The notes: generated by a model from the letters alone, not told the origin. A stretch of 63,818 nucleotides of DNA, filler included, from Octopus bimaculoides (GCF_001194135.2; 7 parts of 6 records of this genome joined end to end with filler, not necessarily neighbours in it); one strand, 5' to 3'; positions 2,107-27,451 are shown, counted from the whole stretch's first letter. Numbers and translations: made by a program.

Positions 2107-2574
2107 NNNNNNNNNNNNNNNNNNNNNNNNNNNNNNNNNNNNNNNNNNNNNNNNNNNNNNNNNNNNNNNNNNNNNNNNNNNNNNNNNNNNNNNNNNNNNN
2201 NNNNNNNNNNNNNNNNNNNNNNNNNNNNNNNNNNNNNNNNNNNNNNNNNNNNNNNNNNNNNNNNNNNNNNNNNNNNNNNNNNNNNNNNNNNNNNNNNNNN
2301 NNNNNNNNNNNNNNNNNNNNNNNNNNNNNNNNNNNNNNNNNNNNNNNNNNNNNNNNNNNNNNNNNNNNNNNNNNNNNNNNNNNNNNNNNNNNNNNNNNNN
2401 NNNNNNNNNNNNNNNNNNNNNNNNNNNNNNNNNNNNNNNNNNNNNNNNNNNNNNNNNNNNNNNNNNNNNNNNNNNNNNNNNNNNNNNNNNNNNNNNNNNN
2501 NNNNNNNNNNNNNNNNNNNNNNNNNNNNNNNNNNNNNNNNNNNNNNNNNNNNNNNNNNNNNNNNNNNNNNNNNA

Positions 2575-3515
2575 AATTCCCTCAAGGTCGACTTTGCTTT
2601 TTCTCATTTCAGGATCGTTAAAATAAATGCCAGTTGCGCACAGGAGTCGATGTAATCAATTTACAGTCTTCCAAAATTACTAGCACTCTGCCCAAAATTT
2701 CAAAGCATTATTATTATTATTATTATTATTATGGTGATTCCGCCGAGGTCGACATTGCCTTTCATCCTTTCGGTATCAATAAGTTGAGTACCAGTGAAAC
2801 ACTGGGATTTGTGTATTCGACTCATTCCCTCCTCCAAAATGGCTGCCCTTGTGGCAAAATTTGAAACTATTATTATTATGACAATTAAGGCAGTGAGCTG
2901 GCAGAATCGTTAGCACGCCGGGCAAAATGCTTTGTGACATTTCGTCCGTCTTTACGCTGGGGTCGACTTTACCTTTCATCCATTCGGGGTCGATAAATTA
3001 AGTAATAGTGAAACACTCGGATCGATGTAATCGACTAGTTCCCTCCGCCAAAATTTCAGGTCTTGTGCCTATAGTAGAAAGGATTATTTCTATGATGATT
3101 AAAACTGGGAGAATCGTTAGAACGCTGGGCAAAATACAAATCCCGCCGCGGTCGATTTGCCTTTCATCATTTTGGTGTTGATAAAATAAATATTAGTTAA
3201 GTACTGAGGTCAATGTAATCGACTTATCCCCGCCCCCGAATTTGCTGGCGTTGTGCCAAAATAGGAAATCAATATTTTAACCATAGTTATAAGGCGGCAA
3301 ACTGGCAGAGTTGTCGGCAAGCCGGGCAAAATGCTTCACGGCATTTCCTCTGTCTTTATGCTCTGACTTCAAATTCCGCTGTGATCGATTTTACCTTTCA
3401 TCCTTTCAAGTTCGATAAAATAAGTACTAGTTGAGCATCGGAGTCGATGTGATCGACTTGCCCTTCATTCGAAATTGCTAGTCTTGTGCCAAATTTTGAT
3501 ACCAATATTTTAGCC
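2575..3515 (+). mobile_element. Cluster of ~5 head-to-tail SINE family B copies
   Basis: Repeated GAGCTGGCAGAATCGTTAGCACGCCGGGC...TTCAAATTCCGCCGAGGTCGACTTTGCCTTTCATCCTTTCGGGGTCGATAAA...GTACCAG...GTCGATGTAATCGACT units separated by (ATT)n. Confidence 0.9.
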
Positions 3516-6337: not shown

Positions 6338-6406
<69 letters not shown>

Positions 6407-6414
6407 TAATAATA
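6338..6414. repeat. (AAT)n microsatellite, about 25 units
   Basis: Direct reading; source of the poly-N and poly-I pseudo-ORFs. Confidence 0.97.
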
Positions 6415-6741
6415 AAAGAAATGGAAAAACTTTCAAAATACAAAGACTTGGAAATAGAGATAACTCGAATGTGGAATCTAAAAACAGAAACAATTCCTAT
6501 CATAGTGCCTTAGGTATAATAAAAAAATATTCAGACAAATACATAACAAAAACACCAGGATTTACAAATATATATAACATACAGAAAATTGCACTACTGG
6601 GCACTGCACACATCCTACGCAAAACACTTTCAATACAGTAACCATAGGAGCATCACAGCAAACCACAGCACGTACCCAAGGCACACATAGCTGCGCTTGA
6701 TAGTGAAGTGAAAGCACGTTATAAAAATAAAACTACTGAAC

Positions 6742-6780
<39 letters not shown>
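6415..6780 (+). mobile_element. 3' end of an RLE-type non-LTR retrotransposon (Dong/R4-like), 5'-truncated, with (AAT)n tail
   Basis: Translation KEMEKLSKYKDLEIEITRMWNLKTETIPII...ALGIIKKYSDKYITKTPGFTNIYNIQKIALLGTAHILRKTLSIQ* matches the C-terminal restriction-like endonuclease region of R4/Dong-type ORFs; short 3'UTR then (AAT)n at 6742-6780. Confidence 0.85.
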
Positions 6781-6995
6781 CCTTTCTGCTGGATGCACAA
6801 GGCCTGAAATGTGTGGGGTGGGAACTAGTCGATTATTTGGACCCAGTGTTTCACTGGTACTTAATTTTATCGACCCGGAAAGGATGAAATGCAAAGTCAA
6901 CCTCGGCAGAATTTGAACTCAAAACGTAAAGACAGACGAAATGCCGCTAAGCATTTTGCCCTGCACTCTAACGATTCACCAGCTCGCCGCCTTAA
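6781..6995 (-). mobile_element. SINE family B, near full length
   Basis: Reverse complement of the family B unit; its (ATT)n tail merges with the preceding (AAT)n. Confidence 0.85.
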
Positions 6996-7027
6996 TTGTC
7001 AATTAATATTATGATGTTATTCGAAGA

Positions 7028-7207
7028 CAGCGAGCTGGTAGGATTGTTAACATGCCGGGAAAGATGCTGAGCGGTATTTCGTCTTTACGCTCTGAGTTCA
7101 AATTCTGCCGAGGTGGACTTTGTCTTTCGTCCTTTCAGGGTCGAGATCACAGGGGTCGATGTGATTATCTTAATCCCTCCTCTCCAATTGCTGGTTTTAG
7201 GCCAAAT
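7028..7207 (+). mobile_element. SINE family B copy
   Basis: GCGAGCTGGTAGGATTGTTAACATGCCGGG...TTCAAATTCTGCCGAGGTGGACTTTG...; runs into a gap. Confidence 0.85.
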
Positions 7208-7508
7208 NNNNNNNNNNNNNNNNNNNNNNNNNNNNNNNNNNNNNNNNNNNNNNNNNNNNNNNNNNNNNNNNNNNNNNNNNNNNNNNNNNNNNNNNNNNNN
7301 NNNNNNNNNNNNNNNNNNNNNNNNNNNNNNNNNNNNNNNNNNNNNNNNNNNNNNNNNNNNNNNNATATATATATATATATATATATATATACGCATATGT
7401 ATGTATGTATGTGTGTGTGTATGTATGCGTATATGTGTGTGTGTCTGTGCCAGTATACATAGGTTTATTTCTTGGTATCTATGCGTATAGTGTACATATA
7501 TGTATGCA

Positions 7509-7549
<41 letters not shown>

Positions 7550-7866
7550 TGTGTGTGTTTGTGTGTGTGTGTACATTTATAGATGTTTTTGCGCATGAAT
7601 GTAGGTATTTAGTTTTTGTACGCCTCTGTGTATTGTATTTCTATGAAGATATAGATATATATGCATCTGTCAACATTGCCTTATTCTCTTACCCTCTTTC
7701 TCCATCTACACACACTGACACACACACAATGTTATTTGTAACACGTCTGTAACACCATGTGTAACACGTCTCCCCAGTTTTCTCCCCTCTCCAGTATCAT
7801 TCCCTTTTCGACCTGGTATTTGTAAATTATGAATCTGACTAAAATCCTTATGGAAAAAGAAAATCA

Positions 7867-8424
7867 TTATTGACCCTCTTAAGAGCCTCTCCCTATCTTG
7901 CTGACATCTGTCATTTTCCAATTTCTCCAGTCCTTACCACTCTTTGTATTGGAAAAACTTCCTTGCTGCTGCTGATCCACTCTGTTTTCGACAGACGCGT
8001 CAGAAAACAACTCAATCTGACACATTTCTCTATATTTTGTAAATATATCTTCTTTATTTCCACGTAAAAGTAAAACTAGTTTAGATGAATTTTATTTTAT
8101 TTTGTGTTCTTGACTTAGCGTGTGTTCGTAAGTATGAAAATGTTATTTTGATTTTGTAATATATCTCTAGTACAAGTAAGATGCCGACAAGATCTTATTA
8201 TTTCCAAAAGAATGATATCTGAGTATTTTTGCTGTGTCATCTTCAGTTGACAAATCCAGACCACAGACTATGCATGAAGTGCGAGTACTGTTTTCTGAAT
8301 ATGAATTTGTTTTGTTGCATGTCACTATGTGTATATCAATATGAAATTACCTGTTTGCATCAGGCAGACAAATTATTTTGCTGTAAACTAGTGTACACCA
8401 ACTACGAGGAGCTAACACCATAAC
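7867..8424 (-). pseudogene. Disabled copy (copy 1) of an unidentified terminal coding exon
   Basis: Minus strand: TCTATAG|GTTATGGTGTT acceptor-like site at 8424; translation HIDIHIVTCNKTNSYSENSTRTSCIVCGLDLSTEDDTAKILRYHSFGNNK...DVSKIGRGS*EGQ*; several stops and indels. Nucleotide homology to 10078-10810 spans ~7765-8502. Confidence 0.55.
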
Positions 8425-8967
8425 CTATAGACATATATAACTAGAACAAACGGATTAACTAGATTAGGAAATTTACTATAAATAGATATAGGCATATGTC
8501 TGGGTGATTTAAGATATGAATTCAAATGAAAACATCTTATGTAACATTACTGAATAACTTAGCCACTGTTGCATAGATTTCATGGAAATTCAGCTTAGCT
8601 TTTCCAAGAAGATTAGAAAACGGTGTGTAGTTTCACAAATGTATATATGCTTATGTAAACAGATCCCGGGGTATGTCACGTTAGATAAATATACTGCCCC
8701 CCCCCACAGTAACATTAATTCAATGGGGAAGAATGTTGATTTCAAAAAATGTAGGTTATTGAATCTAATTAATCCAACAAGTATGAACACGATGAAGAAC
8801 TGCTATATATGTGTGTTTGCGTGTATGCGTGCACATACATACACATAAATGCAGGCACACACACACACACATGCATACACGCATACAGGCAAGCACACAC
8901 ACGTGCATGCACACAAGCAAGCACACACAAACACACACACACAACATACGCAGCACGCACACAAACA

Positions 8968-10077
8968 CTAGAGGAATATCCTAGCGATCCATGGAAATTC
9001 ATGGAATAACAATGAGTATGCAGTCATGTGAAGATTTAAGTACGCATTACAAACTATATGAGTGAGGAATTGACATCACTCAATATTGTCACTGAAGAAG
9101 AAATTCCAACGAAATGGCCCAATTCACTTAATTGTTCATTCCAAAGACTCCAAAAAGAAAAATGGGTGTTTTGCTATGTGCTGGTATGATGAAGAAAAAA
9201 TCAGTTTCCAAATCTTGATGTTTTGTCCAGAAGCTGAACATATGAAGAGACAAGATTCTCAGGTCCAGTTCAACGATTTTTCACTGTTTGCCTTTGCAAT
9301 TTCTTGGTGTTTATGGCGAAATTGAGTCTGATAGGAATTTTAAGGAAACTTCCGAAATTCAAATTGCAGACTAAGTTGCCTTCAAAGTTTTTCTGGATAT
9401 GAATCAACGACCATCAGTACATTTGACTAATATGATTCTAAATTCTCTCACATGAAACATAATATATTTGATAGTCAATCTTGTGTAGTTGAAGAGTTTT
9501 GGAGATCCCGGGTTACAAAGTAGCGTATTCGATGCACCAAGCGTAAGCATGAGACTGGGTAGAGATTGTTACAGGTTCAAGGCTATTCAGAAATTCGATT
9601 GAATACTTAATAACTTTGCCATGCGAAGTGATTATGTCTATTGATCTATGTCATCATTTGTCACAGATTAAAATGCCTATATGCTTTCTAATGATTTTTG
9701 TCACAGTGACATTTTTAGTGATCATATTGCTCCTTCCTCGGGCTAGTTTGCAGCACATCATCAGAGCTTTTTCTAACATTCACATCATGCAATCAGTTCC
9801 TGTTCTATTTCAATGACGTTACTGAATAGCAAGTAAATTTGATCGCCAGGAACTCTTTTAAGAAAACCATTTCCTACTTTGAATATCTGGGTGGCGAACT
9901 CACTGGTATTATTTCTAGTTAAGTGTACTCTCATATTGAGCGGTAAGGCTCAGTCATGGAAAGCAAAGCCAAGTTAAGGCATTTTTAGGCATGCATATTC
10001 CAGAGCAGCTCTAATTTATCAGACAATTTCAGGCAGAGCAACTCCTACTATACATGCCTTTTCTCTCTGAAATGACG
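8968..10077 (-). mobile_element. Helitron PIF1-like helicase C-terminal half plus candidate 3' terminus (decayed)
   Basis: Minus-strand frames give RHFREKRHV (GDFRQILPV-like), LNMRVHLTRNNTSEFATQIFKVGNG, IEFLNSLEP and NFAINTKKLQRQTVK (FAMTINKSQGQT-like). An 18-nt hairpin TCCATGGAAATTCATGGA (8988-9005) lies 16 nt upstream of CTAG|T (8971-8968). Confidence 0.85.
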
Positions 10078-10166
10078 CAGATATATACCTCTTTCTATTT
10101 ATAGTAAATGTCTTAATCCAGTTAATCCGTTTGTTCTAGTTATACATTATTGTTTTATGTCTGCAG

Positions 10167-10720
10167 ATTATGGAGTTAGCTCTTCGCAGTTATGTACAAT
10201 AGTTTACAGCAAAATAATTTCTCTGCCTGATACAAGCAGGGAAATTCATATTGATATACACACAGTGACATGCAACAAAACAAATTCCTATTTAGAAAAT
10301 AGTACTCGCACTTCATGCATTGTTTGTGGTCTGGATTTGTCAACCAAAGATGACACAGCAAAAATTTTCAGATATCATTCCTCTGGAAATAATAAGACGC
10401 TGTCGGCATCTTGTACAAGAGCTGTATTACAAAATAAAAATAACATTTCCATGTTTATGAACACACGCGAAGTCGAAAACAGAATAAAATATAATTCTTC
10501 TAAACTGGTTTTACTTTTACATGGAAACTTAGGAGATATATTTATAAAATATAGAGAAATATGTCAGATTGAGTTGTTTTCCGACGCGTCTGTCGAAATC
10601 AAATCGGAATGGATCTGCAGTTGGAGGAATTATTTCCAATATGGCACTTGTAAAGATTGAAGGATTTTGAATACGACAGATGTCAGCAAGATAGGAAGAA
10701 GCGTTTATGAAAGCCAATAA
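10167..10720 (+). pseudogene. Near-intact copy (copy 2) of the unidentified terminal coding exon, inserted in the Helitron
   Basis: TTGTTTTATGTCTGCAG|ATTATGG acceptor-like site; frame open 10157-10657; one TGA (10658-60) where copy 1 has TGG; frame ends CAA TAA at 10720, the same position as copy 1. I do not recognise the protein family. Confidence 0.55.
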
Positions 10721-10809
10721 AGGTTTTTTTTCAGAAAGATTTTTATCAGACTGAAAATTTACAATTACCAGGTCGAATGGGTTGGGGAGATGAGAGACGA
10801 TCGGGGAAA

Positions 10810-12500
10810 TGTGTTACAGATAATATCATATATTTTCCTAACCAACCATTCGACTGTTTGTGTCTCATGGTTTCTTCAATCCAAACGATCCTATTTACAT
10901 ATCTTCCGGATTTTGCTATTACGTGTATTTTCTTGGTGTTGCACATGGTTTGTTCTTTTGTAAGGTCTGGTGGTAATTTAAGTATAAAGAGTGCAATTTT
11001 TTTTATCATCCAAAAGAATTGCTGCAATGCTATTTGATGACACACCAAAGACAATATTGCTGCTTTTGCCAAAATTTTGCAAGCAGGAGATTCGGAATAT
11101 TTTGGATGTTTTCATGAGAAGCACTGATGAAGAAGATACTTTTTTTGCCATTTTGTATGATTTTAATGATGGAGTGAGGAGCATTGTACTGGTCATCTAT
11201 CAATCGAGGTAAATTTTCGCTTTCAAACTGATATAAAGCATCAAAATCCAATTTTTGCTCCCCAAAAGTCTGCATGTGCTGTTTCTATTTCGTCAATGGA
11301 TTCTTACATCCTACAGTTAATGTACTGTTCAGGATTTAAACATGACGGAACCGGTCAGGGAGAACTTCAGTCTGGATGCAGGGTTAAAAGTGTAGGTACA
11401 CGTTATCATTCTAACTTGGTTCGAATAATATTCTAACATATTGCTTTTGTACTCCTACAAGAGTAGATGTTTGTCAATTTCAGATGCAGCGAGTATAATA
11501 GAAATATTCTTTTTTTAACTTGAAATGTGATTAACTGCTTCTGCTTCTAAAGCTTTTTCAAAGACCCAGGATTCTTGGTATGTTGTTCACGTCTTGCCTG
11601 AAAACTACCTGAGACCTTAAAAGGATAGCAAAGCGGCGAAGAAGCTGCAAATGATAAACCTTACTTGTTGCGTTTGACGGTATCATGTACACCGACGTTT
11701 TTTGCTCATACACCAAATAATTATGCTTATTTCGATTCCATGTTTTTCAATAAAATCCAGTTAGAGTAGGTTAGACTCTCGTTCTGGCAGTCAAGTTTGA
11801 AAACAAAAGTGAGCTTTGAATCGGGTGACACTTGACAATTTATTTACGTGCATTTTCTGTCATTTCTCCAGCTGAACGCACTGATGGATATCAGTGGATG
11901 TCAAATCAAAATATTCTTCATAGTTGGAGATGTACCGATCTGTCAAATATCGTGTGACTTCATGTCGCCCAACTGCTCGCTCCCTTCTATTAGCAAAAGT
12001 AACCATGTTGTTTCCCTTACAATTTGCAACTGAAAGTATTGCTTTCACAAAAAGGCAGTACTCAACATTCATGTAAGATTTTCGAACCTTGCACATTAGT
12101 TCGATGGGTGGACTTTTATGCATGGGGAAGCTGAATTGGTTGCTCCACATGGAATAGTTGAGGATTTATTGAATCGTCATAATTCTAAAGCAACTAAGCT
12201 GAGATGATTTTTGTCAGTGTCATCTGGCGCTATTTTATCTTTTCAGTAGATCAATATATCAGACTGAGGAAGACTTATCTTCTAAAATTCAATAATGATC
12301 ATGCACACACTGAGTTCATTGACGGTTGTCCCATATTTTAGAAGGAAGAAGAACTGCGCATGGCTTTCTTGGAATACCCAAACAATAAGATGCTGTTGAT
12401 GCTTTAGTTCCTGTTACCGAAAATGTTCATCGGAAATTTCTGTTCATTTCGGATTACATAATGATGTAATGACGAGATCCAGCCGGCCAAATTTTCTTAC
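10810..12500 (-). mobile_element. Helitron Rep (HUH) domain and helicase N-terminal half (decayed)
   Basis: DLVITSLCNPK*TEI (PDLFITFTCNPKW-like), IIEF*KISLPQSDILIY (IEFQKRGLPHAHIL-like), SYMNVEYC...HEVTRYLTDRYIS, VYMIPSNATSKVYHLQLL, IDDQYNAPHSII...NLLLAK, KLPPDLTKEQTMCN...IVWIEETMRHK, in the canonical Rep-to-helicase order. Confidence 0.88.
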
Positions 12501-12554
12501 ATTTGCCAATGTATAATGTATCTTCTATCGTTTATTTATTTATTTTTTTTTTCA

Positions 12555-12955
12555 GATATTGGACTGTGGCCGTGTGATGCACTGCCTTGAAGGGTTTAGA
12601 CGAATAGAACGACCCCAGCATTTGATTTCTAAGCTTGGTATTTATTCTGCCATCATCTTATGCCGAACCCCTAAATTTTGAGGCACGTAAACAAGCCAAA
12701 ACTTGTTATCACGCAATGATGAGAGATAGTCACATACACAAAGACATGCACACACATAAATACTCACACACATACATATGCGATGGGCTTCTTTCAATTT
12801 CTGTTTGCCGAATCCCTTCAAATGACTTTGGTCGTATCGGGACTATATCAGAAAACACTTGCCCAAGGTACGACGAAGCAGGTCTGAACCCAGAACCATG
12901 TGGTTATGGAGCAAACTACTTACCACGCAATCACATTTCTGCGACTGCATCTTGA
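12555..12955 (-). mobile_element. SINE family A, near full length, inserted in the Helitron
   Basis: Tail (TTTCAG..GACTGTGGCCG), internal (CA) tract and head (GAACCATGTGGTT..CTACTTACCAC) in antisense. Confidence 0.8.
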
Positions 12956-12959
12956 TAGT

Positions 12960-13120
12960 AGCATGACTGGTTGACTGGTTCCTTCTTTTTACCGCAAGAC
13001 TTGATGGAATTGATTCAACACCATGAATTCTTAGCAGCTGATTGCTTAATAGGTTCTTTGTCCTGATCCTGAGTCGAGATACCACAGTATCTAAAAGTGT
13101 CTTGATTCTTGCACACACGC
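12960..13120 (-). mobile_element. Possible continuation of the Helitron ORF upstream of Rep
   Basis: Weak similarity of ESIPSSLAVKRRN to the ILPSSFxGSPR region; position and strand are consistent. Confidence 0.3.
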
Positions 13121-13132
13121 ACGCACGCACGT

Positions 13133-13209
<77 letters not shown>

Positions 13210-13665: not shown

Positions 13666-13792
13666 AAGATAGGTGATCTTCGAAGAGTTGCTGAAATTGA
13701 TGAACCAATGATAGCTCTCTTACTTGACTATACTTTTGTTTTGAGCAAATTGGTTCATCAATTTCAGCAACTCTTCGAAGATCATCTATCTT
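13666..13792. repeat. Near-perfect 44-bp inverted repeat with a 39-nt loop
   Basis: 13666-13709 versus 13749-13792: 43/44 complementary; the single mismatch is a G-U pair in plus-strand RNA. Confidence 0.95.
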
Positions 13793-13860: not shown

Positions 13861-15789
13861 AGAAAAATAGTCAGTTCCTTTTCCCAGGAATACATTGAAG
13901 GGAGACATGTAACTCTGAAAGAACTGGTTAGGCAGGAAACAGACAAGTGCCACTTACGACATGTTGGAATAAGAGGCTACCCATTAGTTAAATGAGCATA
14001 AATTTCAAATTTCTTCCTATTATGTGATATAAAATGAATGCGAGTATCGTAATCAGCACGCTAAATTACATCAGTAAACAGTAAGACAAATCAGACACTA
14101 CGACCAAAGTGCCAGAATATTGGGTTGACATGGAAATTCACTACGGGTTAATTAATATGTGAAAAAGTAGAACTTTTATAGAGGTGAAATATACAAGATT
14201 CTCCTATCAGAATAAAACTCCTCTACGAACATATGTCAAGAAGATATTAGCAACTAACTGGAGGATTTTTTGTCGTTTTAAATGCTCTTTAGTTTCATTT
14301 TTTTCTTCATTCTGTATATTTACCAATAACTGTATGTAGACAGATGCATATATGGACTTTGGAATACTTCTAAAACGAATGTTTTTATTAGCTTAAAGAT
14401 CAATTATGTATTAACGTAGTGACGCAGCACGTATAAATCTATACGCTCAAGCATTTAACTTACGAAAGACAAAACAAAAATAAAAACAAAATTCTACTCA
14501 CTGATATTATCATACAGACTTTATTGAAATATTGTTGTGTTCGCCTCTGATCTTTATATTAAGAAGTATCAGTTAACTGACAGACCAAATTTGATGTAGA
14601 AGTAATAGCTCCTTTAAATATACTTAATTATATGCAACCACACAAAAAGCATGCACAGACATTAACATAGCTATGACACTTAACATCTTCACACAGTGCA
14701 AAGAAAGATCATCTAAATGGTCGCATACGCTGTATTTTTATTTCTAAACAGTTTTCGAATTCGATATTTTGAAAATTGGATATTCTGTTTACACAGAAAA
14801 AGTAATTTTCCATCCCTCTCTTTAACTAACAGCCCATTTAACATTTTAACGTTTCTACCGGTTATATGAAGCGGTTAAAAACTACCTGTGTTGACGTTAA
14901 CACGTATTTTGCTCATAGTGATTGCTATTCGAACTCTTTAAGCTGCGAATGGTAAAGAGGGGACCATAACAATTTGAATAAACTACCTGTGTAAAACCCT
15001 CGCTCTCTTCTCCTTTCGATGTGTATGTAACTATATATCTCTATCCCTTACATAACCTTCATGATCGCTTACTCTAATTCTCTTACCTCTATGTACCTCT
15101 TACTTCATGTGTGCCTCTCATTCCCTATTACAGTTTCTCTCTCATTTTTTCCTGTCGTGTTCTGTTACATAGTCTGTGAGTGTATGTATATATACATATA
15201 TATGATGGACCCTAATGAGGCTGCACCGACAATATTGCAAGGCTGCACATGAAAATGTTATACAGCTTCTAGATATCAAGTGAGTAGTCGCTACAGCGAA
15301 AGCACTTGTAGGTCATTATGATATGCTGTATATAACTATAAAATAAACTTTGAGCATAAAAATATCCATACTCTTTATTATCATTCATATCAATATATAC
15401 TTCAGATAATTTTTACTGTCCATCGAAGAGTACACGGAATTACCCATCCGAAGCATCCACGGAGTTACTAACAGCTTATCGTAGTCACTGAGTTTAGATG
15501 ATCGTTGTTGTTTATCCGTTAAGCGGAACTTAAGTGAGAGTTAATACGGTATCTACTCGAATGATATATACCACCAAAGTCATTATCTATCTATCTATCT
15601 ATCTATGGGTGTATATGTCAGCTATGTATATCATCAGGTGCGAGTGTAGTGTATGTGCCTGAGCTCGAATATGCGTGTATTAAAGCTTGTTGTATGCGTG
15701 TGTGTGCGTACGTGTCTAACATGCATGTATGAGTGTGTGTGAATATGGATGATTGGTAAACGAAAGCTTATACATTCGTGTAGTAACGT

Positions 15790-16794
15790 CTATGTATGAA
15801 ATGCGGCGAGCATATTCTTAGTGCAATTTTTCAACAGTACAATCGGATTTTAACAGTTTGTTTTTTCAAAGCTCTAATGGAAGTGACAAAGGAGCATATA
15901 CGGCATATTTTGCTTTATGAGTTCAATAAAAGCAACAATGTAACGAAAGTGCGAGGAATATTAATGCAGTATATGGGGATCGGACAGTAAGCATAAGCCA
16001 GTGTCAACAGTGGTTCCAGAAATTCCTTGTCGGAAACTACAGCCTAGAAGATGAGCCTCATCCAGGAAGATTTGTAGAGCTAGACAAGGACATCCTGCAA
16101 ATCCTGGTGCAACAAAATGCCATCGTAACTGTTGAGGAACTAGCAGGGAAACCTGGATTTGGTCATTCAACCATTCATCAACACATGCCGAAGATAGTGA
16201 GTAGGGAAAGGAGAAACACCGGTACCCCAGGCTAAAGCAGGTTTTCACCCACGTACGTTGTTATCAGTTTGGTGGGATATGAAAGATTTAATCCACTTCG
16301 AACTTTTAAACTCAAGCCAAACGATAACAAAGGAGTTCTACTGCGAGTAGATTGAGCGGTGTAAGTCAACGCTAGAAGGTAAACGACCATCTTGATTTCA
16401 AGACAGAAAATGTTCTTCCATTAGGATAATGCTCGGTCACATACAAGGATGACATTCCAAAAGCCGGAGGAATTTGAATAGGAAACGATGCCTCACACAC
16501 CATATTCGCTTGATATTTTCCCATCTGATTATCATTTATTCCACAGTCTTCAAAATCATTTGAACGGAAAAAATATGGATTCAGTAGACGTGGTCAGAAC
16601 AATACTGGAGGAGTATTTTTCGTCACGGACAAGTGAGTTTTGTAAGAGGGACCTTGCAAGTCTACCAGATAGATGGAAGAGCATTGTAGAAAATGGAAAA
16701 GAGTATATTTTTGATTAAAAAAGAACTTTGTTTATCTTAATTTTGAAAAGCAAAAGAAGTATAAAAAGACTGCATTATGTATGGGATTACCCAA
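15790..16794 (+). mobile_element. Mariner transposon, internally deleted, with stops (copy M1)
   Basis: MEVTKEHIRHILLYEFNK..., EDEPHPGR, LSVWWD, H*DNARSH, PHTPYSLDIFPSDYHLFHSLQNHL...RWKSIVENGKEYIFD*; 3' TIR ..ATGGGATTACCCAA followed by TA. The WVPxxL to first-Asp region is deleted and the 5' TIR is degraded. Confidence 0.93.
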
Positions 16795-17059: not shown

Positions 17060-17278
17060 AAGGCGGCACACTGGCAGAATAGTTAGCACACCGGACACAT
17101 TGGCGGCATTTCGTTTATCTTTGTCCTCTGGGTTCAAATACCGCTGGGGTCGATTTTGTCTTTCATCCTTTCGAGGTTGATAAAATAAATACTAGTTGAG
17201 CACCAGGGTTGATGCAATCGTCTTAGGCCCTTCCCCTAAAAAAAATCTGGCCTTGTGCTAAAATTTCTAACCAATATT
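17060..17278 (+). mobile_element. SINE family B copy
   Basis: AAGGCGGCACACTGGCAGAATAGTTAGCAC...TTTCATCCTTTCGAGGTTGATAAAA... Confidence 0.85.
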
Positions 17279-18300: not shown

Positions 18301-18921
18301 TTGAGTAACCCCATGAATAATGCGATCTTTTTATACTTCTTTTGTTTTTCAAAATTAAGATAGCTCTTTTTTACTATAAAATGTATTCCCTTCATTTTCT
18401 ACAATGCTCATCCATCTATCTAGTAGCCTTGCAAGGTCCCTTTTCTAAAACTCACTTGTCCGTGACGAAAAATACTCCTTTAGTACTGTTCTGACCTTGT
18501 CAGCTGAATCCATATTTTTCCGTCCAAATGATTTTGAAGACGGCGGAATAAATGATAATCAGATAGGGAAATGTCCGGCTAATATGGTGGATGGAGTATC
18601 ATTTCCTATTCAAACTTCTCGGCCTTTGGAATGTCGTCCTCGTTTTATGTGACCAAGTATTATCCTAATGGAAGAGCATCTTCTATCTTGAAACCAAACA
18701 TGGTCGTTTTCCTTCGAGCGCTGCCTTACGCCGTTCAAAGTACTCGCAATAGATCTCCTTTGTTATCGTTTGGTTTGAGTTAAAAAGTTCAAAGTGGACT
18801 AAATCTGTCATATCCCACCAAACTGATAACAACACCCTACATATGTGAAGACCTGCTTTAGCCTGGGGTGCCGGTGTTTCTTCTTTCCCTACCCACTATC
18901 TTCGGCGCTTAACATTTTTAT
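18301..18921 (-). mobile_element. Mariner transposon, 3' two-thirds (copy M2), inverted relative to M1
   Basis: TA plus TIR TTGAGTAACCCCATGAATAATGCG at 18299 matches the reverse complement of the M1 3' end; minus strand reads KNVKRRR*WVGKEETPAPQAKAGLH...H*DN...PSDYHLF; 5' end abuts a SINE. Confidence 0.92.
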
Positions 18922-19088
18922 ACGGCGCGCTTCTTTCAGTTTCCGTCTACCAAATCCACTCACAAGGCTTTGGTCGGCCCGAGGCTATAGTAGAAGACAC
19001 TTGCCCAAGGTGCCACGCAGTGGGACTGAACCCGGATCCATGTGGTTGGTAAGCAAGTTACTTACCGCACAGCCACTCCTGCGCCTAT
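18922..19088 (-). mobile_element. SINE family A 5' part
   Basis: CTTCTTTCAGTTTCCGTCTACCAAATCCACTCACAAGGC...CAGCCACTCCTGCGCCT. Confidence 0.9.
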
Positions 19089-19789
19089 ATATATTTGCAT
19101 AAATATATTGCATGTACATACACACACACACACACATGTATGCATATGTATGTGTGTGTTGTGTATGCATGTATATCTATATGTGTATGTGTGCTTGTGT
19201 GTATTAATGTGAGTTCATAAACAAATGTTGACATTTGAAATTGCAAATAATCTTTATTTCATTTATCTGTTGCCTCTACAAAGTATTTATTTGAAGTTTA
19301 AATATGATTTAAATACAATTACCTTATTTGGTTGTAGTTCAAAAATATATATCTCGAATAAAACAGCGTAAAGAGATATTTATTTAAATTCTTAGTTACG
19401 AAAGACTTTTCATGATTAGCATGAATTATTTTATCACAGCTTCCTTAATACAGTTAAAATTGCTAACGTCTTTATATCCGTGGGTATTTAAAGTATTGCG
19501 AACTAGAGGTAAGAAGCGTTTAGTAAACCACTACTAAGTAAGTTGGAAATAATGGATTGAAAACGTACAAAATAAACAAGAAATATGAAATAAAAATTAT
19601 ATTTTTAAATGATGTTTCGATATTTTGACAGTAAAAAGCCTTTGAACAAGAATAGAGGTGATTAAGCTTCGTTCTGATATGTCAAGTAAATGCAAAGACG
19701 AATGGAGTCATTTTATCCAATTATAATGCGTTTTAACTACGGTGTTATTTTTTATCTTTAATAACATTTTTTAGTTAATGAATTGCAAT

Positions 19790-20199
19790 CATACTGGAGA
19801 CACCGTCTAGAAGAGTATTAGCCAAACATTACTTGCTTTTTCTTAAAATCTGGTATTTATTCTATCGATCTATTTTGCCGAACCGTTACGTTAGGAAGAC
19901 GTAAACTAACACCGGTTGTCAAACAGTTGTAAGGAGACGAACACAGACAGAAAGACATATACACATTCAAATCAAACGTAAATTATACCCTCGATATCTA
20001 TGTATGTANNNNNNNNNNNNNNNNNNNNNNNNNNNNNNNNNNNNNNNNNNNNNNNNNNNNNNNNNNNNNNNNNNNNNNNNNNNNNNNNNNNNNNNNNNNN
20101 NNNNNNNNNNNNNNNNNNNNNNNNNNNNNNNNNNNNNNNNNNNNNNNNNNNNNNNNNNNNNNNNNNNNNNNNNNNNNNNNNNNNNNNNNNNNNNNNNNN

Positions 20200-24055: not shown

Positions 24056-24811
24056 GATACAGATTTATTTAATTACTTACAATTATGTATTTATGCTAGC
24101 ATGGCGCACGAGCATAAAACTATGTGCACACATGCACACACACACACATACACTCACAGGCACGCATTTATATATATACATATATATATACACACATATA
24201 TATACATACCTATATATATGTAAATATGTATATATATGTATGTTTATGTATGTATCTATATATAAACACATAATTATGTAAAGGTGTGTATGTCTGTATA
24301 TATNNNNNNNNNNNNNNNNNNNNNNNNNNNNNNNNNNNNNNNNNNNNNNNNNNNNNNNNNNNNNNNNNNNNNNNNNNNNNNNNNNNNNNNNNNNNNNNNN
24401 NNNNNNNNNNNNNNNNNNNNNNNNNNNNNNNNNNNNNNNNNNNNNNNNNNNNNNNNNNNNNNNNNNNNNNNNNNNNNNNNNNNNNNNNNNNNNNNNNNNN
24501 NNNNNNNNNNNNNNNNNNNNNNNNNNNNNNNNNNNNNNNNNNNNNNNNNNNNNNNNNNNNNNNNNNNNNNNNNNNNNNNNNNNNNNNNNNNNNNNNNNNN
24601 NNNNNNNNNNNNNNNNNNNNTATATGAAATATGAAAAAAGTATACTAAATCTGTACAAAAATTTATGGATAAATATTTTCATCTACTCAAACTCTTACAA
24701 TGTCAAGAAAATTATTGTCGTTCCCGCCTGTAAAATGATACTTGAAAATTCGAAACATTGTGTCGTATTATGGCTAGAGTCTTAAATTTGGGATAAAGTA
24801 AAAGGAAATGA

Positions 24812-25329: not shown

Positions 25330-25710
25330 GAGCGAATATGAGGGGATATTAACTAATTCTTGTTTTATGCTAGGTGTGCAGCTGAACAAGAACCTTAAGT
25401 TATATCTTTTGAATATTTTCCTATATCTATCGTCTCGCGGAAAAATGTTTATCCGCTAACCTAAGAAAGGCTCTACCTAACCTCGCACAATTTCGTGTTA
25501 AATAAGAAAACGGGGGAACCAGTTGCTTTGTGGCGGAAAATTCTCTTAAGAATCCAAGGGCCAGATATTTAGGCAATAAGATCTTTAAACTCGTTATAGT
25601 AGGCTCCACTGCATGGTAGACATACTTATTTGAAGGTAGGTTTGAGATTCTCTCACCGATACTCTTTTTCGAAACACTATATGTAGTTGGCAAGAGGCTG
25701 TGTGTAAGTA
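25330..25710 (-). mobile_element. Penelope-like element, segment 3' of the nested mariner
   Basis: KKSIGERISNLPSNKYVY..., PPFSYLTRNCARLGRAFLRLADKHF, RYRKIFKRYNLRFLFSCTPSIKQ (PLE thumb/linker motifs). Confidence 0.8.
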
Positions 25711-26784
25711 CGAGAGAGTGTCAAAAATTATGCTCACTCTTATTTTTTTCAATGTATTCGCACAAAAGCAGAGGATAAACAAATACGCCATATTTCTATA
25801 GAGTTGCCTTGCTTTTCGATTCACTTGGTCTGGCGCCCCTCAAGCTTGCGTATTCCCTCCAAGAACAAGGTTGTTGGTTGGTCGTGCAACCATTCATGCG
25901 CCGATTCCCTCACATCTTCTTCCGTAGGAAATCGACGACCTCGTAAACCATCTTTGAGCGGTCCAAAGATATGATAGTCGGAAGGGATGAGATCTGGGTT
26001 ATAGGCAGGGTGTTCCAGCACTTCAGAATCCAATTGGTTAATGGTTTCAACGATCTGGGTGGCAGTGTGTTGGCATTCATTGTCATGCAACAACTAAACT
26101 TGCTTCAACAATAGGCTTCGGCGTTTGGTGCAAATTTCTGGCTTCAGTTTGTTGGTCAGCAAAGTACTGTATTTTGCACTGCTGGTCGTACACCTGTTTC
26201 CTAGGTAGTTTTCCAGTATAGGCCCTTTTGAGTCCCAAAAAAGGGTTAGCATCACCTTTCCCGCAGAAGACTGAGTCTTGGATTTCTCCGTCACTGGAAG
26301 GCCAGGATGTTTCCACTCCAGACTCTGTCTTTTGGATTCTGCCTCATAATGATGAACCAATGTTTCTTCTCTTGTGACAATTCTGCTCAGAAATTCGTCA
26401 CCTCCGTTGTTGTAGCGATCGAGTAAACGTTGGCAGACCTCAAGACGTTTGCGCTTGTGCTCTGCAGTAAGTTCTCTTGGCACCCATCTTGCACAGACTT
26501 TATGGAAGCCGAGCTCATCCTGGATGATTTGATTGGCAGACACATGACTAACATTCCTATCAGAGAAATCAGATCACTGCTCTTTGTACTTCTTTGGCGC
26601 ACATTGCTAGTGAAGCGGCTATGCTTACACTGTAAAGCCAGGAATAAAAATGGCATGATCAGGCTCCAACTTCGATCATGTGACCAGAATAGTGCCAACT
26701 ATAAGCACTCATGCGCAGAAGGCAGTGTGACAATAAAAAAGATATGTTATGGTAGAAGTGCGGATATGTTTTGACTTGCCTACG
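25711..26784 (-). mobile_element. Mariner transposon with both imperfect TIRs and TA target duplication (copy M3, different family from M1/M2)
   Basis: ELGFHKVCARWVPREL, RIVTREET, KVMLTLFWD, LHDN, HPAYNPDLIPSDYHIFGPLKDGLRGRRF; ends TA|CGAGAGAGTGTCAAAAATTATGCTCACT (25709) and AGTGCGGATATGTTTTGACTTGCCTACG|TA (26786); most of the N-terminal HTH region is missing. Confidence 0.95.
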
Positions 26785-27250
26785 TACAATAGCCTCTTGT
26801 TTGGTTTTCAGTATGACCTGCATGAACCTGTTCCAAAAAGAAGTGCGCCATCTAAGAAGTCAACACCAGATTGGTTTCCATGATAACCGTGAGCTCTAGA
26901 GAGGAGAAGATGTGGTTTAGGTCTTCCTTAACCTAATAGGGCTGTACTTGTTAATACCTCTAATGATGGCTAAGGATTCGCCTCTACATATGTCAAAGTG
27001 GGTTAAAGGAATTTTTTTATTTAGTGTATCTAAGATAAAGAGATCTGCAAATAACAGATATCGATTTGAATGACCGTCGTCATTTCGAAGCAATATTCTG
27101 GGTCTTTTTGGTTGACATGGACTTAATCATTATCGAGCATCTGGATTTTTCAAACTTGGTTTGGTATTATCTAAATCTCTGTTGACAATTTCCATAAACT
27201 CTACAGTAAAATTAAGACTGTTGAACCTTATTTAACAGTTCACTCGACAA
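26785..27250 (-). mobile_element. Penelope-like element RT segment 5' of the nested mariner
   Basis: ADLFILDTLNKKIPLTHFDICRGESLAII (GLYRDDGLA-like, decayed), IMETNL, VDFLDGALLFGTGSCRSY*KPNKRLLY. Confidence 0.78.
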
Positions 27251-27393: not shown

Positions 27394-27451
27394 NNNNNNN
27401 NNNNNNNNNNNNNNNNNNNNNNNNNNNNNNNNNNNNNNNNNNNNNNNNNNN

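What the first reader, a model, noticed from the sequence alone, without database searches (positions are those of the whole stretch)
7765..10810. Unidentified ~185-codon exon-like segment in two inverted copies, one replacing part of a Helitron helicase
Seen: 7765-8502 and 10078-10810 are inverted homologues. Both have an AG at the same position before (D/G)YGVSS and end at the same CAA TAA. In a 50-codon block aligned by hand (HIDIH...GNNK) there are 12 differences, 7 synonymous and 5 non-synonymous, against roughly a quarter synonymous expected under neutrality. Copy 2 has one nonsense codon (TGA where copy 1 has TGG). It sits antisense between helicase motif II and the GDFRQ-like motif, and about 14 codons of linker appear missing. 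Inference: a once-selected terminal exon of a gene or TE family I cannot name, either captured by the Helitron, copied into it by repair, or moving as its own unit. This is the best candidate for undescribed coding content.
Basis: partly seen in the sequence, partly recalled or inferred. Interest (0 to 1): 0.7.

Follow-up and report, generated by a model that had tools for sequence, protein, structure and literature searches.

The report
Inverted duplicate inside a dead Helitron
A 760-base stretch carrying an unidentifiable 167-194-codon reading frame sits inside a long-dead Helitron transposon of an octopus-type genome and was later copied, flipped, 1.5 kb away; it is real, but it looks like an old local duplication, not a new mobile element or a proven gene.

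Summary
The inverted pair is real: 10066-10821 (+) and 8514-7757 (-) are 84% identical over aligned bases, with 9 indels. Identity is 88% in the first 530 bp and 75% in the last 220 bp. Over the whole frame 24 of 67 differences are synonymous against 17.7 expected (P=0.04).

Copy 2 keeps a 194-codon stop-free frame, the longest in the piece. Copy 1 has 4-6 stops and at least 3 frameshifts.

The protein matches nothing in Pfam, a 5.8-billion-protein word search, an exhaustive HMMER search of 1.84 billion representatives, or PDB. The AlphaFold model is unusable (pLDDT 34).

The host is a decayed Helitron on the minus strand. So the real insert is about 10090-10765. Copy 1 is most likely a later local inverted copy of insert plus helicase flanks, not an independent insertion.

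No further copy was found in the window or in 123 kb of Octopus DNA. Whether the frame was ever selected remains open.

The parts
10066..10821 (+). Copy 2 of the repeated block. It lies inside the helicase of the Helitron relic, antisense to it, and homology may run on to about 10827.
7757..8514 (-). Copy 1 of the repeated block. Its frame is decayed by stops and frameshifts.
7730..7765 (-). Outer junction of copy 1. The motif GTGTTACA occurs three times at 11-12 nt spacing here, where copy 2 has it once (10811-10818).
   Evidence: read directly from the sequence
10090..10765 (+). Inferred true insert, about 676 bp, between the helicase 'PFGG' and 'GDFRQ' positions. It consists of a 67-nt leader, the reading frame and a 108-nt trailer with AATAAA at 10715-10720.
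   Evidence: the boundaries are an inference
10157..10660 (+). ATG-to-TGA reading frame of 167 codons. The stop-to-stop frame is 10076-10657 (194 codons). Reading through the TGA would end at TAA 10718-10720.
10086..10089 (.). TACC, the left copy of a 4-nt direct repeat that brackets the inferred insert. On the minus strand the same bases give GT...AG ends.
   Evidence: read directly; a 4-nt repeat is weak evidence
10766..10769 (.). TACC, the right copy of the 4-nt direct repeat.
10066..10089 (-). Inner end of block copy 2. Read antisense it gives G-I-Y-L-R-H-F-R, a decayed helicase motif III (GDFRQ region).
8491..8517 (+). Inner end of block copy 1. Read antisense it gives G-I-C-L-G-D-L-R-Y. 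This is the only hydrophobic+GD+hydrophobic+R/K match in all six frames of the piece.
10766..10821 (-). Outer end of block copy 2. It lies in the same frame as helicase motif II and reads (S)VTHFPDRLSSPQPIRPG. Copy 1 reads ...SFPFRPGI at 7757-7820 (+).
10815..11284 (-). N-terminal half of the helicase (motifs I-II) of the Helitron relic, with two frameshifts.
   Evidence: PIF1 E=0.0017, model 2-118, below Pfam's cut-off
9191..10062 (-). C-terminal half of the helicase relic, lying in the spacer between the two copies. It includes ..PEIV.., LNMRV (9946-9932), EFLNSL (9596-9579) and the motif V/VI region (9310-9191).
   Evidence: the motif reading rests on my knowledge of PIF1/Helitron helicases
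12267..12530 (-). Rep (HUH) domain remnant of the same Helitron.
   Evidence: Helitron_like_N E=4e-4, below Pfam's cut-off

Best explanation
I propose three steps.

Step 1 (partly shown, partly inferred). An old Helitron, with its Rep-helicase gene on the minus strand from about 12530 down to about 9190, died and decayed.

Step 2 (inferred). A foreign fragment of about 676 bp (about 10090-10765) became lodged, antisense, between the 'PFGG' and 'GDFRQ' positions of the helicase. It carries a leader, a 167-codon ATG-to-stop frame and a short trailer with AATAAA. Its source is unknown. I take it to be a piece of a lineage-specific gene or transposon reading frame, not a chance ORF. It has no terminal inverted repeats, no LTR ends, no poly(A) and at most a 4-nt direct repeat, so capture at a DNA break or a nested insertion of unknown type are both possible.

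Step 3 (best supported). A 756-bp block, made of the insert plus about 24 nt and about 56 nt of flanking helicase sequence, was copied in inverted orientation to a site 1.55 kb away, beyond the end of the helicase. The likely mechanism is a replication template switch or break repair that used the nearby sequence as template. This gave copy 1. The stuttered GTGTTACA motif at the outer junction of copy 1 fits such a mechanism.

Since then the copies have diverged by 12% (first 530 bp) to 25% (last 220 bp). Copy 1 decayed. Copy 2 kept its frame, either by luck (about 0.5-2%) or because it was constrained for some time. Neither copy is shown to be a working gene or an independently mobile unit.
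For: - The pair is real, with exactly two copies in 29.8 kb.
- The Helitron context is supported by Helitron_like_N at 12530-12267 (E=4e-4) and PIF1 model 2-118 at about 11250-10815 (E=0.0017), on the same strand and in the right order.
- EFLNSL is found only once in the six frames, and LNMRV (9946-9932) has its only minus-strand NMRV match here (one other NMRV at 15668, +); both lie on that strand in the spacer. So the helicase continues on both sides of copy 2.
- The inner end of copy 1, read antisense, gives ICLGDLR. This is the single match to hydrophobic+GD+hydrophobic+R/K in 59,698 codons, and it lies at the position homologous to where motif III is expected in copy 2.
- Putting G-D into the copy 2 reading lets the PIF1 model align through the junction to position 215-217 of 223. 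A scrambled or displaced motif does not, and neither does removal of the outer flank.
- Flanks beyond the block show no significant similarity.
- The ends show no TIR, LTR or poly(A).
- The unit is absent from 123 kb of Octopus sinensis and O. bimaculoides DNA that does share the window's common repeats.
- The ORF is longer than chance.
- There is a slight synonymous excess.
Against: - The helicase reading of the block ends rests on short, decayed motifs.
- All Pfam scores are below the gathering cut-off, and the score gains are only 1-3.6 bits.
- The gain from the 'F' of PF is not position-specific.
- An in-frame link between GIYLRHFRE and the following ..KACIVGV.. needs a 1-nt shift at the block boundary.
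- If both copies had decayed neutrally and equally since a local duplication, one copy keeping the 167-codon frame has a probability of only 0.5-2.4%. Taken alone, this asymmetry fits an older and a younger insertion of a dispersed family better.
- Copy number in the source genome could not be measured.
Confidence: 0.5

Rival explanations
1. The two copies are independent insertions, at different times, of an undescribed dispersed repeat of octopods. One candidate is the 3' end (C-terminal coding part, 3' UTR and short-repeat tail) of a non-LTR retroelement, or a 0.76-kb non-autonomous element. Copy 1 would be old and copy 2 young.
For: - All disabling changes are in copy 1, which is only 0.5-2.4% likely under equal neutral decay.
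- The frame region is less diverged than the trailer, as expected if a master copy was constrained (Fisher P=1e-5).
- The frame is open from the 5' edge of the unit.
- The 3' end carries a short motif in variable copy number.
- Another inverted pair in the window, the mariner copies at 16257-16695 and 18393-18833, shows that dispersed repeats do land close together here.
- Octopus genomes hold many unclassified repeat families (PMC13282606).
Against: - There is no third copy in the window, and none in 123 kb of other Octopus DNA. Two copies landing 1.5 kb apart is then unlikely.
- The two copies share the same 5' end, which is not expected of 5'-truncated retroelements.
- There is no TSD, poly(A), RT or any protein relative among 1.84 billion representatives.
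- Copy 1 carries a helicase motif-III-like end.
Confidence: 0.2
2. The frame in copy 2 is, or recently was, a working lineage-restricted gene: either a single-exon gene starting at ATG 10157 or the last exon of a spliced gene. It would have been kept by selection after the duplication, and copy 1 is its pseudogene.
For: - Copy 2 has an intact 194-codon frame against a broken copy 1.
- There is a synonymous excess (P=0.04), strongest in 10247-10396.
- Divergence in the trailer (25%) is about twice that in the frame (11.5%), as expected if one lineage was constrained.
- A conserved ATG, an AG and AATAAA are present.
Against: - There is no homologue in any database, although Octopus sinensis and O. 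bimaculoides proteins are in the 5.8-billion word-search collection, whose search with the frame found nothing.
- No gene with this product is on record.
- The AlphaFold model has pLDDT 33.6.
- Codon-position composition is no different from stop-free random sequence (P=0.14-0.16).
- The 90 nt upstream of the ATG are as conserved as the frame, while the last 20 codons are not. That fits a gene-conversion tract (10066 to about 10598) better than a coding boundary.
- Stop-creating differences are not avoided: 6 observed against 3.4 expected.
Confidence: 0.17
3. The reading frame is a chance open frame in non-coding DNA. The block is simply a duplicated piece of Helitron-internal sequence, for example an intron of the Rep-helicase gene, since GT...AG ends exist on the minus strand.
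For: - Whole-piece shuffles reach 168 codons at the 95th percentile and 224 at most.
- There is no homologue, no fold and no codon periodicity.
- GT at 10768-10767 and AG at 10090-10089 on the minus strand bracket the insert.
Against: - None of 20,000 local shuffles is stop-free, with 13.4 stops expected.
- The synonymous excess and the asymmetry of disabling changes are both in the coding direction.
- The putative acceptor has a poor pyrimidine tract (read directly from the sequence).
Confidence: 0.12
4. The inverted duplication is an assembly artefact.
For: The piece is a draft with five N gaps, one of them (7208-7364) only about 400 bp from copy 1.
Against: The copies differ at 116 aligned bases and 9 indels. 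Artefactual duplicates would be nearly identical.
Confidence: 0.01

Closest known systems
Local inverted duplications made by replication template switching or break repair with a nearby template (FoSTeS / MMBIR-type events and templated 'filler' insertions). This comparison rests on my own knowledge of the literature.
   Same: - The copy lies close by and is inverted.
- The breakpoints are arbitrary and cut through a neighbouring feature (the helicase linker).
- There are no target-site duplication and no terminal repeats.
- A short motif is stuttered at one junction.
   Different: The event is old (12-25% divergence), so junction microhomology can no longer be read. The mechanism is inferred from anatomy only.
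Gene-fragment capture by Helitrons, best known from maize and bats. This comparison rests on my own knowledge.
   Same: A foreign, coding-looking fragment sits inside a Helitron, in antisense orientation.
   Different: - Captured fragments normally lie between the Rep-helicase gene and the 3' end, whereas this one splits the helicase.
- No parent gene could be found.
- Whether other copies of this Helitron carry it could not be tested.
5'-truncated copies of non-LTR retrotransposons (CR1, L2 or RTE type), which are abundant in octopus (PMC13282606).
   Same: The frame is open from the 5' edge, is followed by a short untranslated tail, and ends in a short motif of variable copy number. There is no clear target-site duplication.
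   Different: - There is no reverse transcriptase or any LINE protein similarity.
- Both copies have the same 5' end.
- No other copies were seen in 153 kb of octopod DNA.
- Helicase-like ends are present.
Lineage-restricted (orphan) genes nested in transposon remains.
   Same: It is an intact frame without relatives, with hints of constraint, inside dead repeat DNA.
   Different: There is no evidence of expression, no orthologues, no confident fold, and only marginal statistics.

Membership tests
Helitron (the host element) | Rep/HUH nuclease domain upstream of the helicase on the same strand | tested here: inconclusive
   Helitron_like_N at 12530-12267 (-), E=4e-4, 21.1 bits, below the cut-off of 28.9.
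Helitron (the host element) | PIF1-type helicase C-terminal to Rep | tested here: inconclusive
   PIF1 scores E=0.0017, 18.4 bits, below the cut-off of 25.9. EFLNSL is unique in the six frames and LNMRV is the only minus-strand NMRV match; both lie on the right strand and in the right order. No PDB or database hit was found with the stitched reading.
Helitron (the host element) | 5'-TC ... hairpin-CTRR-3' termini inserted between A and T | not tested
   The relic is too decayed and no family consensus was available.
Autonomous or non-autonomous DNA transposon (the 756-bp unit) | Terminal inverted repeats and a target-site duplication | tested here: not met
   The ends were read directly and show no TIR. 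There is only a 4-nt TACC repeat around the inner 676 bp.
Solo LTR | TG...CA ends with a 4-6 bp target-site duplication | tested here: not met
   The 3' end is ...TGTTACA, but the 5' end is not TG(T) and the flanks do not repeat.
Non-LTR retrotransposon 3' fragment | Homology to a LINE ORF2 or RT, a poly(A) or simple-repeat tail, and variable 5' truncation among many copies | tested here: inconclusive
   There is no protein relative. The tail motif is present once and three times. The 5' ends are identical. Only two copies are known.
Dispersed repeat family of the genome | Many copies in unrelated flanks | tested here: inconclusive
   There are 0 further copies in the 29.8-kb piece and 0 in 123 kb from O. 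sinensis and O. bimaculoides. The source genome itself could not be searched.
Terminal exon of a host gene | Spliced transcript, upstream exons, and conservation that starts at the acceptor | tested here: not met
   Conservation is equal upstream of the AG. No upstream exon was recognised.
Protein-coding sequence under purifying selection | dN/dS clearly below 1 over the whole alignment, and disabling changes avoided | tested here: inconclusive
   dN/dS is 0.42 against 0.64-0.85 off-frame. Synonymous differences are 24 against 17.7 expected (P=0.04). There are 6 stop-creating differences against 3.4 expected, all in copy 1. The chance of the asymmetry is 0.5-2.4%.
Segmental (non-transpositional) local duplication | The duplicated block includes sequence of the neighbouring feature, with arbitrary breakpoints | tested here: met
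   The ends of copy 1 read as helicase linker. ICLGDLR is the only such motif in 59,698 codons. The PIF1 model bridges the junction only with the flank and an in-register GD. The support is moderate, not strong.

The most novel reading that the evidence does not exclude
The frame 10157-10657 encodes a protein family so far unseen in any database. It could be an octopod-restricted gene or the C-terminal part of an undescribed octopod transposon protein. On this reading it stayed under purifying selection after the duplication, nested antisense in a dead Helitron helicase.
Probability: 0.18. Interest if true: 0.5.

Novelty: new member of a known kind. Interest (0 to 1): 0.25.

Why it matters
If the main reading is right, this is ordinary genome wear. 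It is a nested fragment in a dead transposon followed by a local inverted duplication, and it is useful mostly as a worked example. The ends of a repeat can betray where it was copied from, and a hand-picked block can overstate selection.

It would matter more if the frame proved to be expressed and conserved in other octopods. It would then be a protein family without any relative among about 15 billion predicted proteins, in a clade whose genomes are two-thirds repeats and rich in unclassified families.

Tried and rejected
- **THAP-like zinc finger.** The pattern CxxC...RYHSFG...ICQ suggested it. Pfam gives nothing at E up to 10 and the spacing is too long.
- **One 3-kb transposon with 757-bp terminal inverted repeats.** Rejected because the spacer continues the helicase on the same strand.
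- **Solo LTR, Helitron-type ends, processed retrocopy.** The ends do not fit.
- **A larger palindrome or a second inverted Helitron.** Flanks beyond the block are no more similar than shuffled sequence.
- **tRNA-derived SINE or a known RNA family.** No tRNA was found and there were no Rfam hits.
- **Structure route.** The AlphaFold model had pLDDT 33.6, so I ran no fold search, because matches would be meaningless.
- **Codon-position composition.** It is not distinguishable from stop-free random sequence.
- **Exact 24-mer shared by both copies.** It is absent from the metagenome and viral contig collections.
- **Stitched helicase reading.** It finds nothing in the protein collection or PDB, so no intact Helitron relatives could be fetched for comparison.
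- **'PF' of PFGG as register evidence.** Control substitutions at +1 and +3 gave the same gain, so I do not rely on it.
- **Reads and transcripts.** The exact-product look-up for the ORF found nothing (after a failed attempt).


Full report
**Observation.** The piece is AT-rich (about 34% G+C), full of microsatellites and has five N gaps. It holds one long inverted pair. The repeat finder gives collinear arms of 220, 134, 82, 85 and 82 nt. BLASTN joins them into 10066-10821 (+) against 8514-7757 (-) and finds no third copy, and neither does TBLASTN with the frame. A global alignment has 624 matches, 116 mismatches and 9 gap events, which is 84.3% identity. The 5' ends of the two units face each other across 1,551 bp.

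**Is the frame more than chance?** Copy 2 is stop-free for 194 codons (10076-10657), the longest frame in the piece. Shuffles of that stretch expect 13.4 stops, and none of 20,000 was open. In shuffles of the whole piece the longest frame had a 95th percentile of 168 and a maximum of 224. The frame is therefore probably, but not certainly, of coding origin. Codon-position composition adds nothing.

**Was it selected?** Over the whole frame the differences fall 19/20/28 on the three codon positions. dN/dS is 0.42, against 0.85 and 0.64 in the two wrong frames. Re-placing the same 67 changes at random gives 17.7 synonymous against 24 observed (P=0.04), and 3.4 stop-creating changes against 6 observed.

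Two further observations point the same way, but neither is decisive.

- All disabling changes are in copy 1. It has four stops before 10598, further stops beyond, and frameshifts of 1, 4 and 2 nt plus a 5/1/1 set. If both copies had taken half of the changes neutrally, one of them staying open has a probability of 0.5-2.4%.
- Identity is 88% in 10066-10598 and 75% in 10599-10821 (Fisher P=1e-5). However, the well-kept part starts at the edge of the repeat, includes the 90 nt upstream of the ATG, and stops 20 codons before the end of the frame. That fits a gene-conversion tract between the inverted arms at least as well as a coding constraint.

**What does the frame encode?** Nothing recognisable.

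- Pfam gives no hit at E up to 10.
- The word-indexed search of 5.8 billion proteins gives none.
- The exhaustive HMMER search of 1.84 billion representatives gives none at E up to 0.001.
- PDB gives none at E up to 10.
- No gene with this product is on record.
- The AlphaFold model is unusable (pLDDT 33.6), so I did not run a fold search.

**Context.** The window is octopod. Its mariner remnant hits Octopus sinensis and O. bimaculoides proteins among others, and its short repeats recur many times in loci fetched from both genomes.

On the minus strand lies a decayed Helitron:

- a Helitron_like_N remnant at 12530-12267 (E=4e-4);
- a PIF1 remnant covering model positions 2-118 at about 11250-10815 (E=0.0017);
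- in the spacer below copy 2, the sequence ..PEIV.., LNMRV (its NMRV core has one other match, at 15668 on the + strand), then EFLNSL (unique in the six frames), then the motif V/VI region.

Both Pfam hits are below the curated cut-offs, and the C-terminal reading rests on my knowledge of PIF1/Helitron motifs. Order and strand are nevertheless consistent. Because the helicase continues in the spacer, the pair cannot be the two ends of one large element. Copy 2 interrupts the helicase, and copy 1 lies about 0.7 kb beyond its end.

**The ends of the block.** In fact that motif lies inside the repeat.

- The first 24 nt of the block read, antisense, G-I-Y-L-R-H-F-R in copy 2 (10089-10066) and G-I-C-L-G-D-L-R in copy 1 (8491-8514).
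- A search for hydrophobic+GD+hydrophobic+R/K over all 59,698 codons of the six frames finds one match, which is that site in copy 1.
- At the other end the helicase frame runs on, without a shift, for 18 codons into the block..SVTHFPDRLSSPQPIRPG. in copy 2 and ..PFRPGI in copy 1.
- As I recall the family consensus (..LRDI, 5-11 residues, PFGGK, vvvlgGDFRQ, ilPVv..g.r.EIV), the spacing fits with nothing missing.
- The PIF1 model supports this weakly. With G-D restored it aligns through the junction to position 215-217 of 223 (19.6-22.2 bits). With the motif scrambled, displaced, or the outer flank removed, it stops at position 118.
- The 'F' control was not position-specific, so I do not use it.

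I conclude, at about 65-70% confidence, that the true insert is about 10090-10765. It is bracketed by a TACC repeat and, on the helicase strand, by GT...AG. I also conclude that the 756-bp repeat is this insert plus helicase flanks.

**Consequence.** A copy that carries helicase flanks was copied from a Helitron-borne original, not inserted on its own. Several things fit a local inverted duplication by template switching or break repair:

- sequence beyond the block is unrelated;
- there are no TIRs, LTR ends or poly(A);
- the GTGTTACA motif is tripled at the outer junction of copy 1;
- the unit is absent from another 123 kb of Octopus DNA.

Using the calibration quoted for O. vulgaris (JC 0.09 about 25 My, 0.2 about 56 My; PMC13282606), the two divergence levels would correspond very roughly to 18 and 43 My per lineage.

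**What remains open.**

- The origin of the insert is unknown. It could be a captured gene piece, a nested element of unknown type, or an intron of the Helitron gene.
- It is not clear whether the frame of copy 2 survived by luck or by constraint.
- The asymmetry of decay is the main argument for the rival reading, in which an old and a young insertion come from a dispersed family. That reading needs the helicase-like ends, the identical 5' ends and the close spacing to be coincidences.

The tests that would settle this could not be run: copy number in the source genome, other Helitron copies, orthologous loci, and RNA and long reads.

**Verdict.** The feature is real and correctly described, but its significance was over-read. 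It is most likely an old local inverted duplication of a fragment nested in a dead Helitron. The fragment carries an orphan reading frame whose past or present function is unproven.

Noticed in passing
window 16257-16695 and 18393-18833: A second inverted pair (arms 113-137 nt, 83-90% complementary, about 1.7-2.3 kb apart) is formed by two mariner-type transposase remnants, with ORFs at 15930-16715 (+) and 18686-18895 (-).
   Followed up: partly
window 25709-26788 (-): A mariner/SETMAR-like transposase remnant (159-codon frame at 26097-26573) is 83-85% identical in DNA to loci annotated as 'uncharacterized protein LOC...' in Octopus sinensis and O. bimaculoides.
   Followed up: partly
window 13666-13709 and 13749-13792: A near-perfect small palindrome has 44-nt arms, 98% complementary, with a 39-nt loop. 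As a result both strands encode the same peptide (..DLRRVAEIDEP.. / ..LVHQFQQLFEDHLS..). It lies upstream of the Helitron Rep remnant.
   Followed up: partly
window 2700-3510, 6739-7144, 17071-17277, 18919-19151: Copies of short interspersed repeats, including an inverted pair at 6870-6933 / 7081-7144, recur many times in the fetched Octopus loci at 70-92% identity.
   Followed up: no
window 10749-11111 (-): A 121-codon open frame runs through helicase motif II and on into the outer end of copy 2. It is unusually long for a relic whose Walker A motif is unrecognisable.
   Followed up: no
window 2107-2573, 7208-7364, 20009-20199, 24304-24620, 27394-27451: Five runs of N (assembly gaps) are present. 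They produce spurious 'repeats' and X-filled ORFs in the mechanical tools. One gap lies about 400 bp from copy 1.
   Followed up: no
window 6340-6410, 6745-6790, 7365-7600, 8800-8970, 12720-13200: Long (AAT)n, (TA)n/(TG)n and (CA)n microsatellites flank the Helitron relic and copy 1. Several listed ORFs there are low-complexity artefacts.
   Followed up: no
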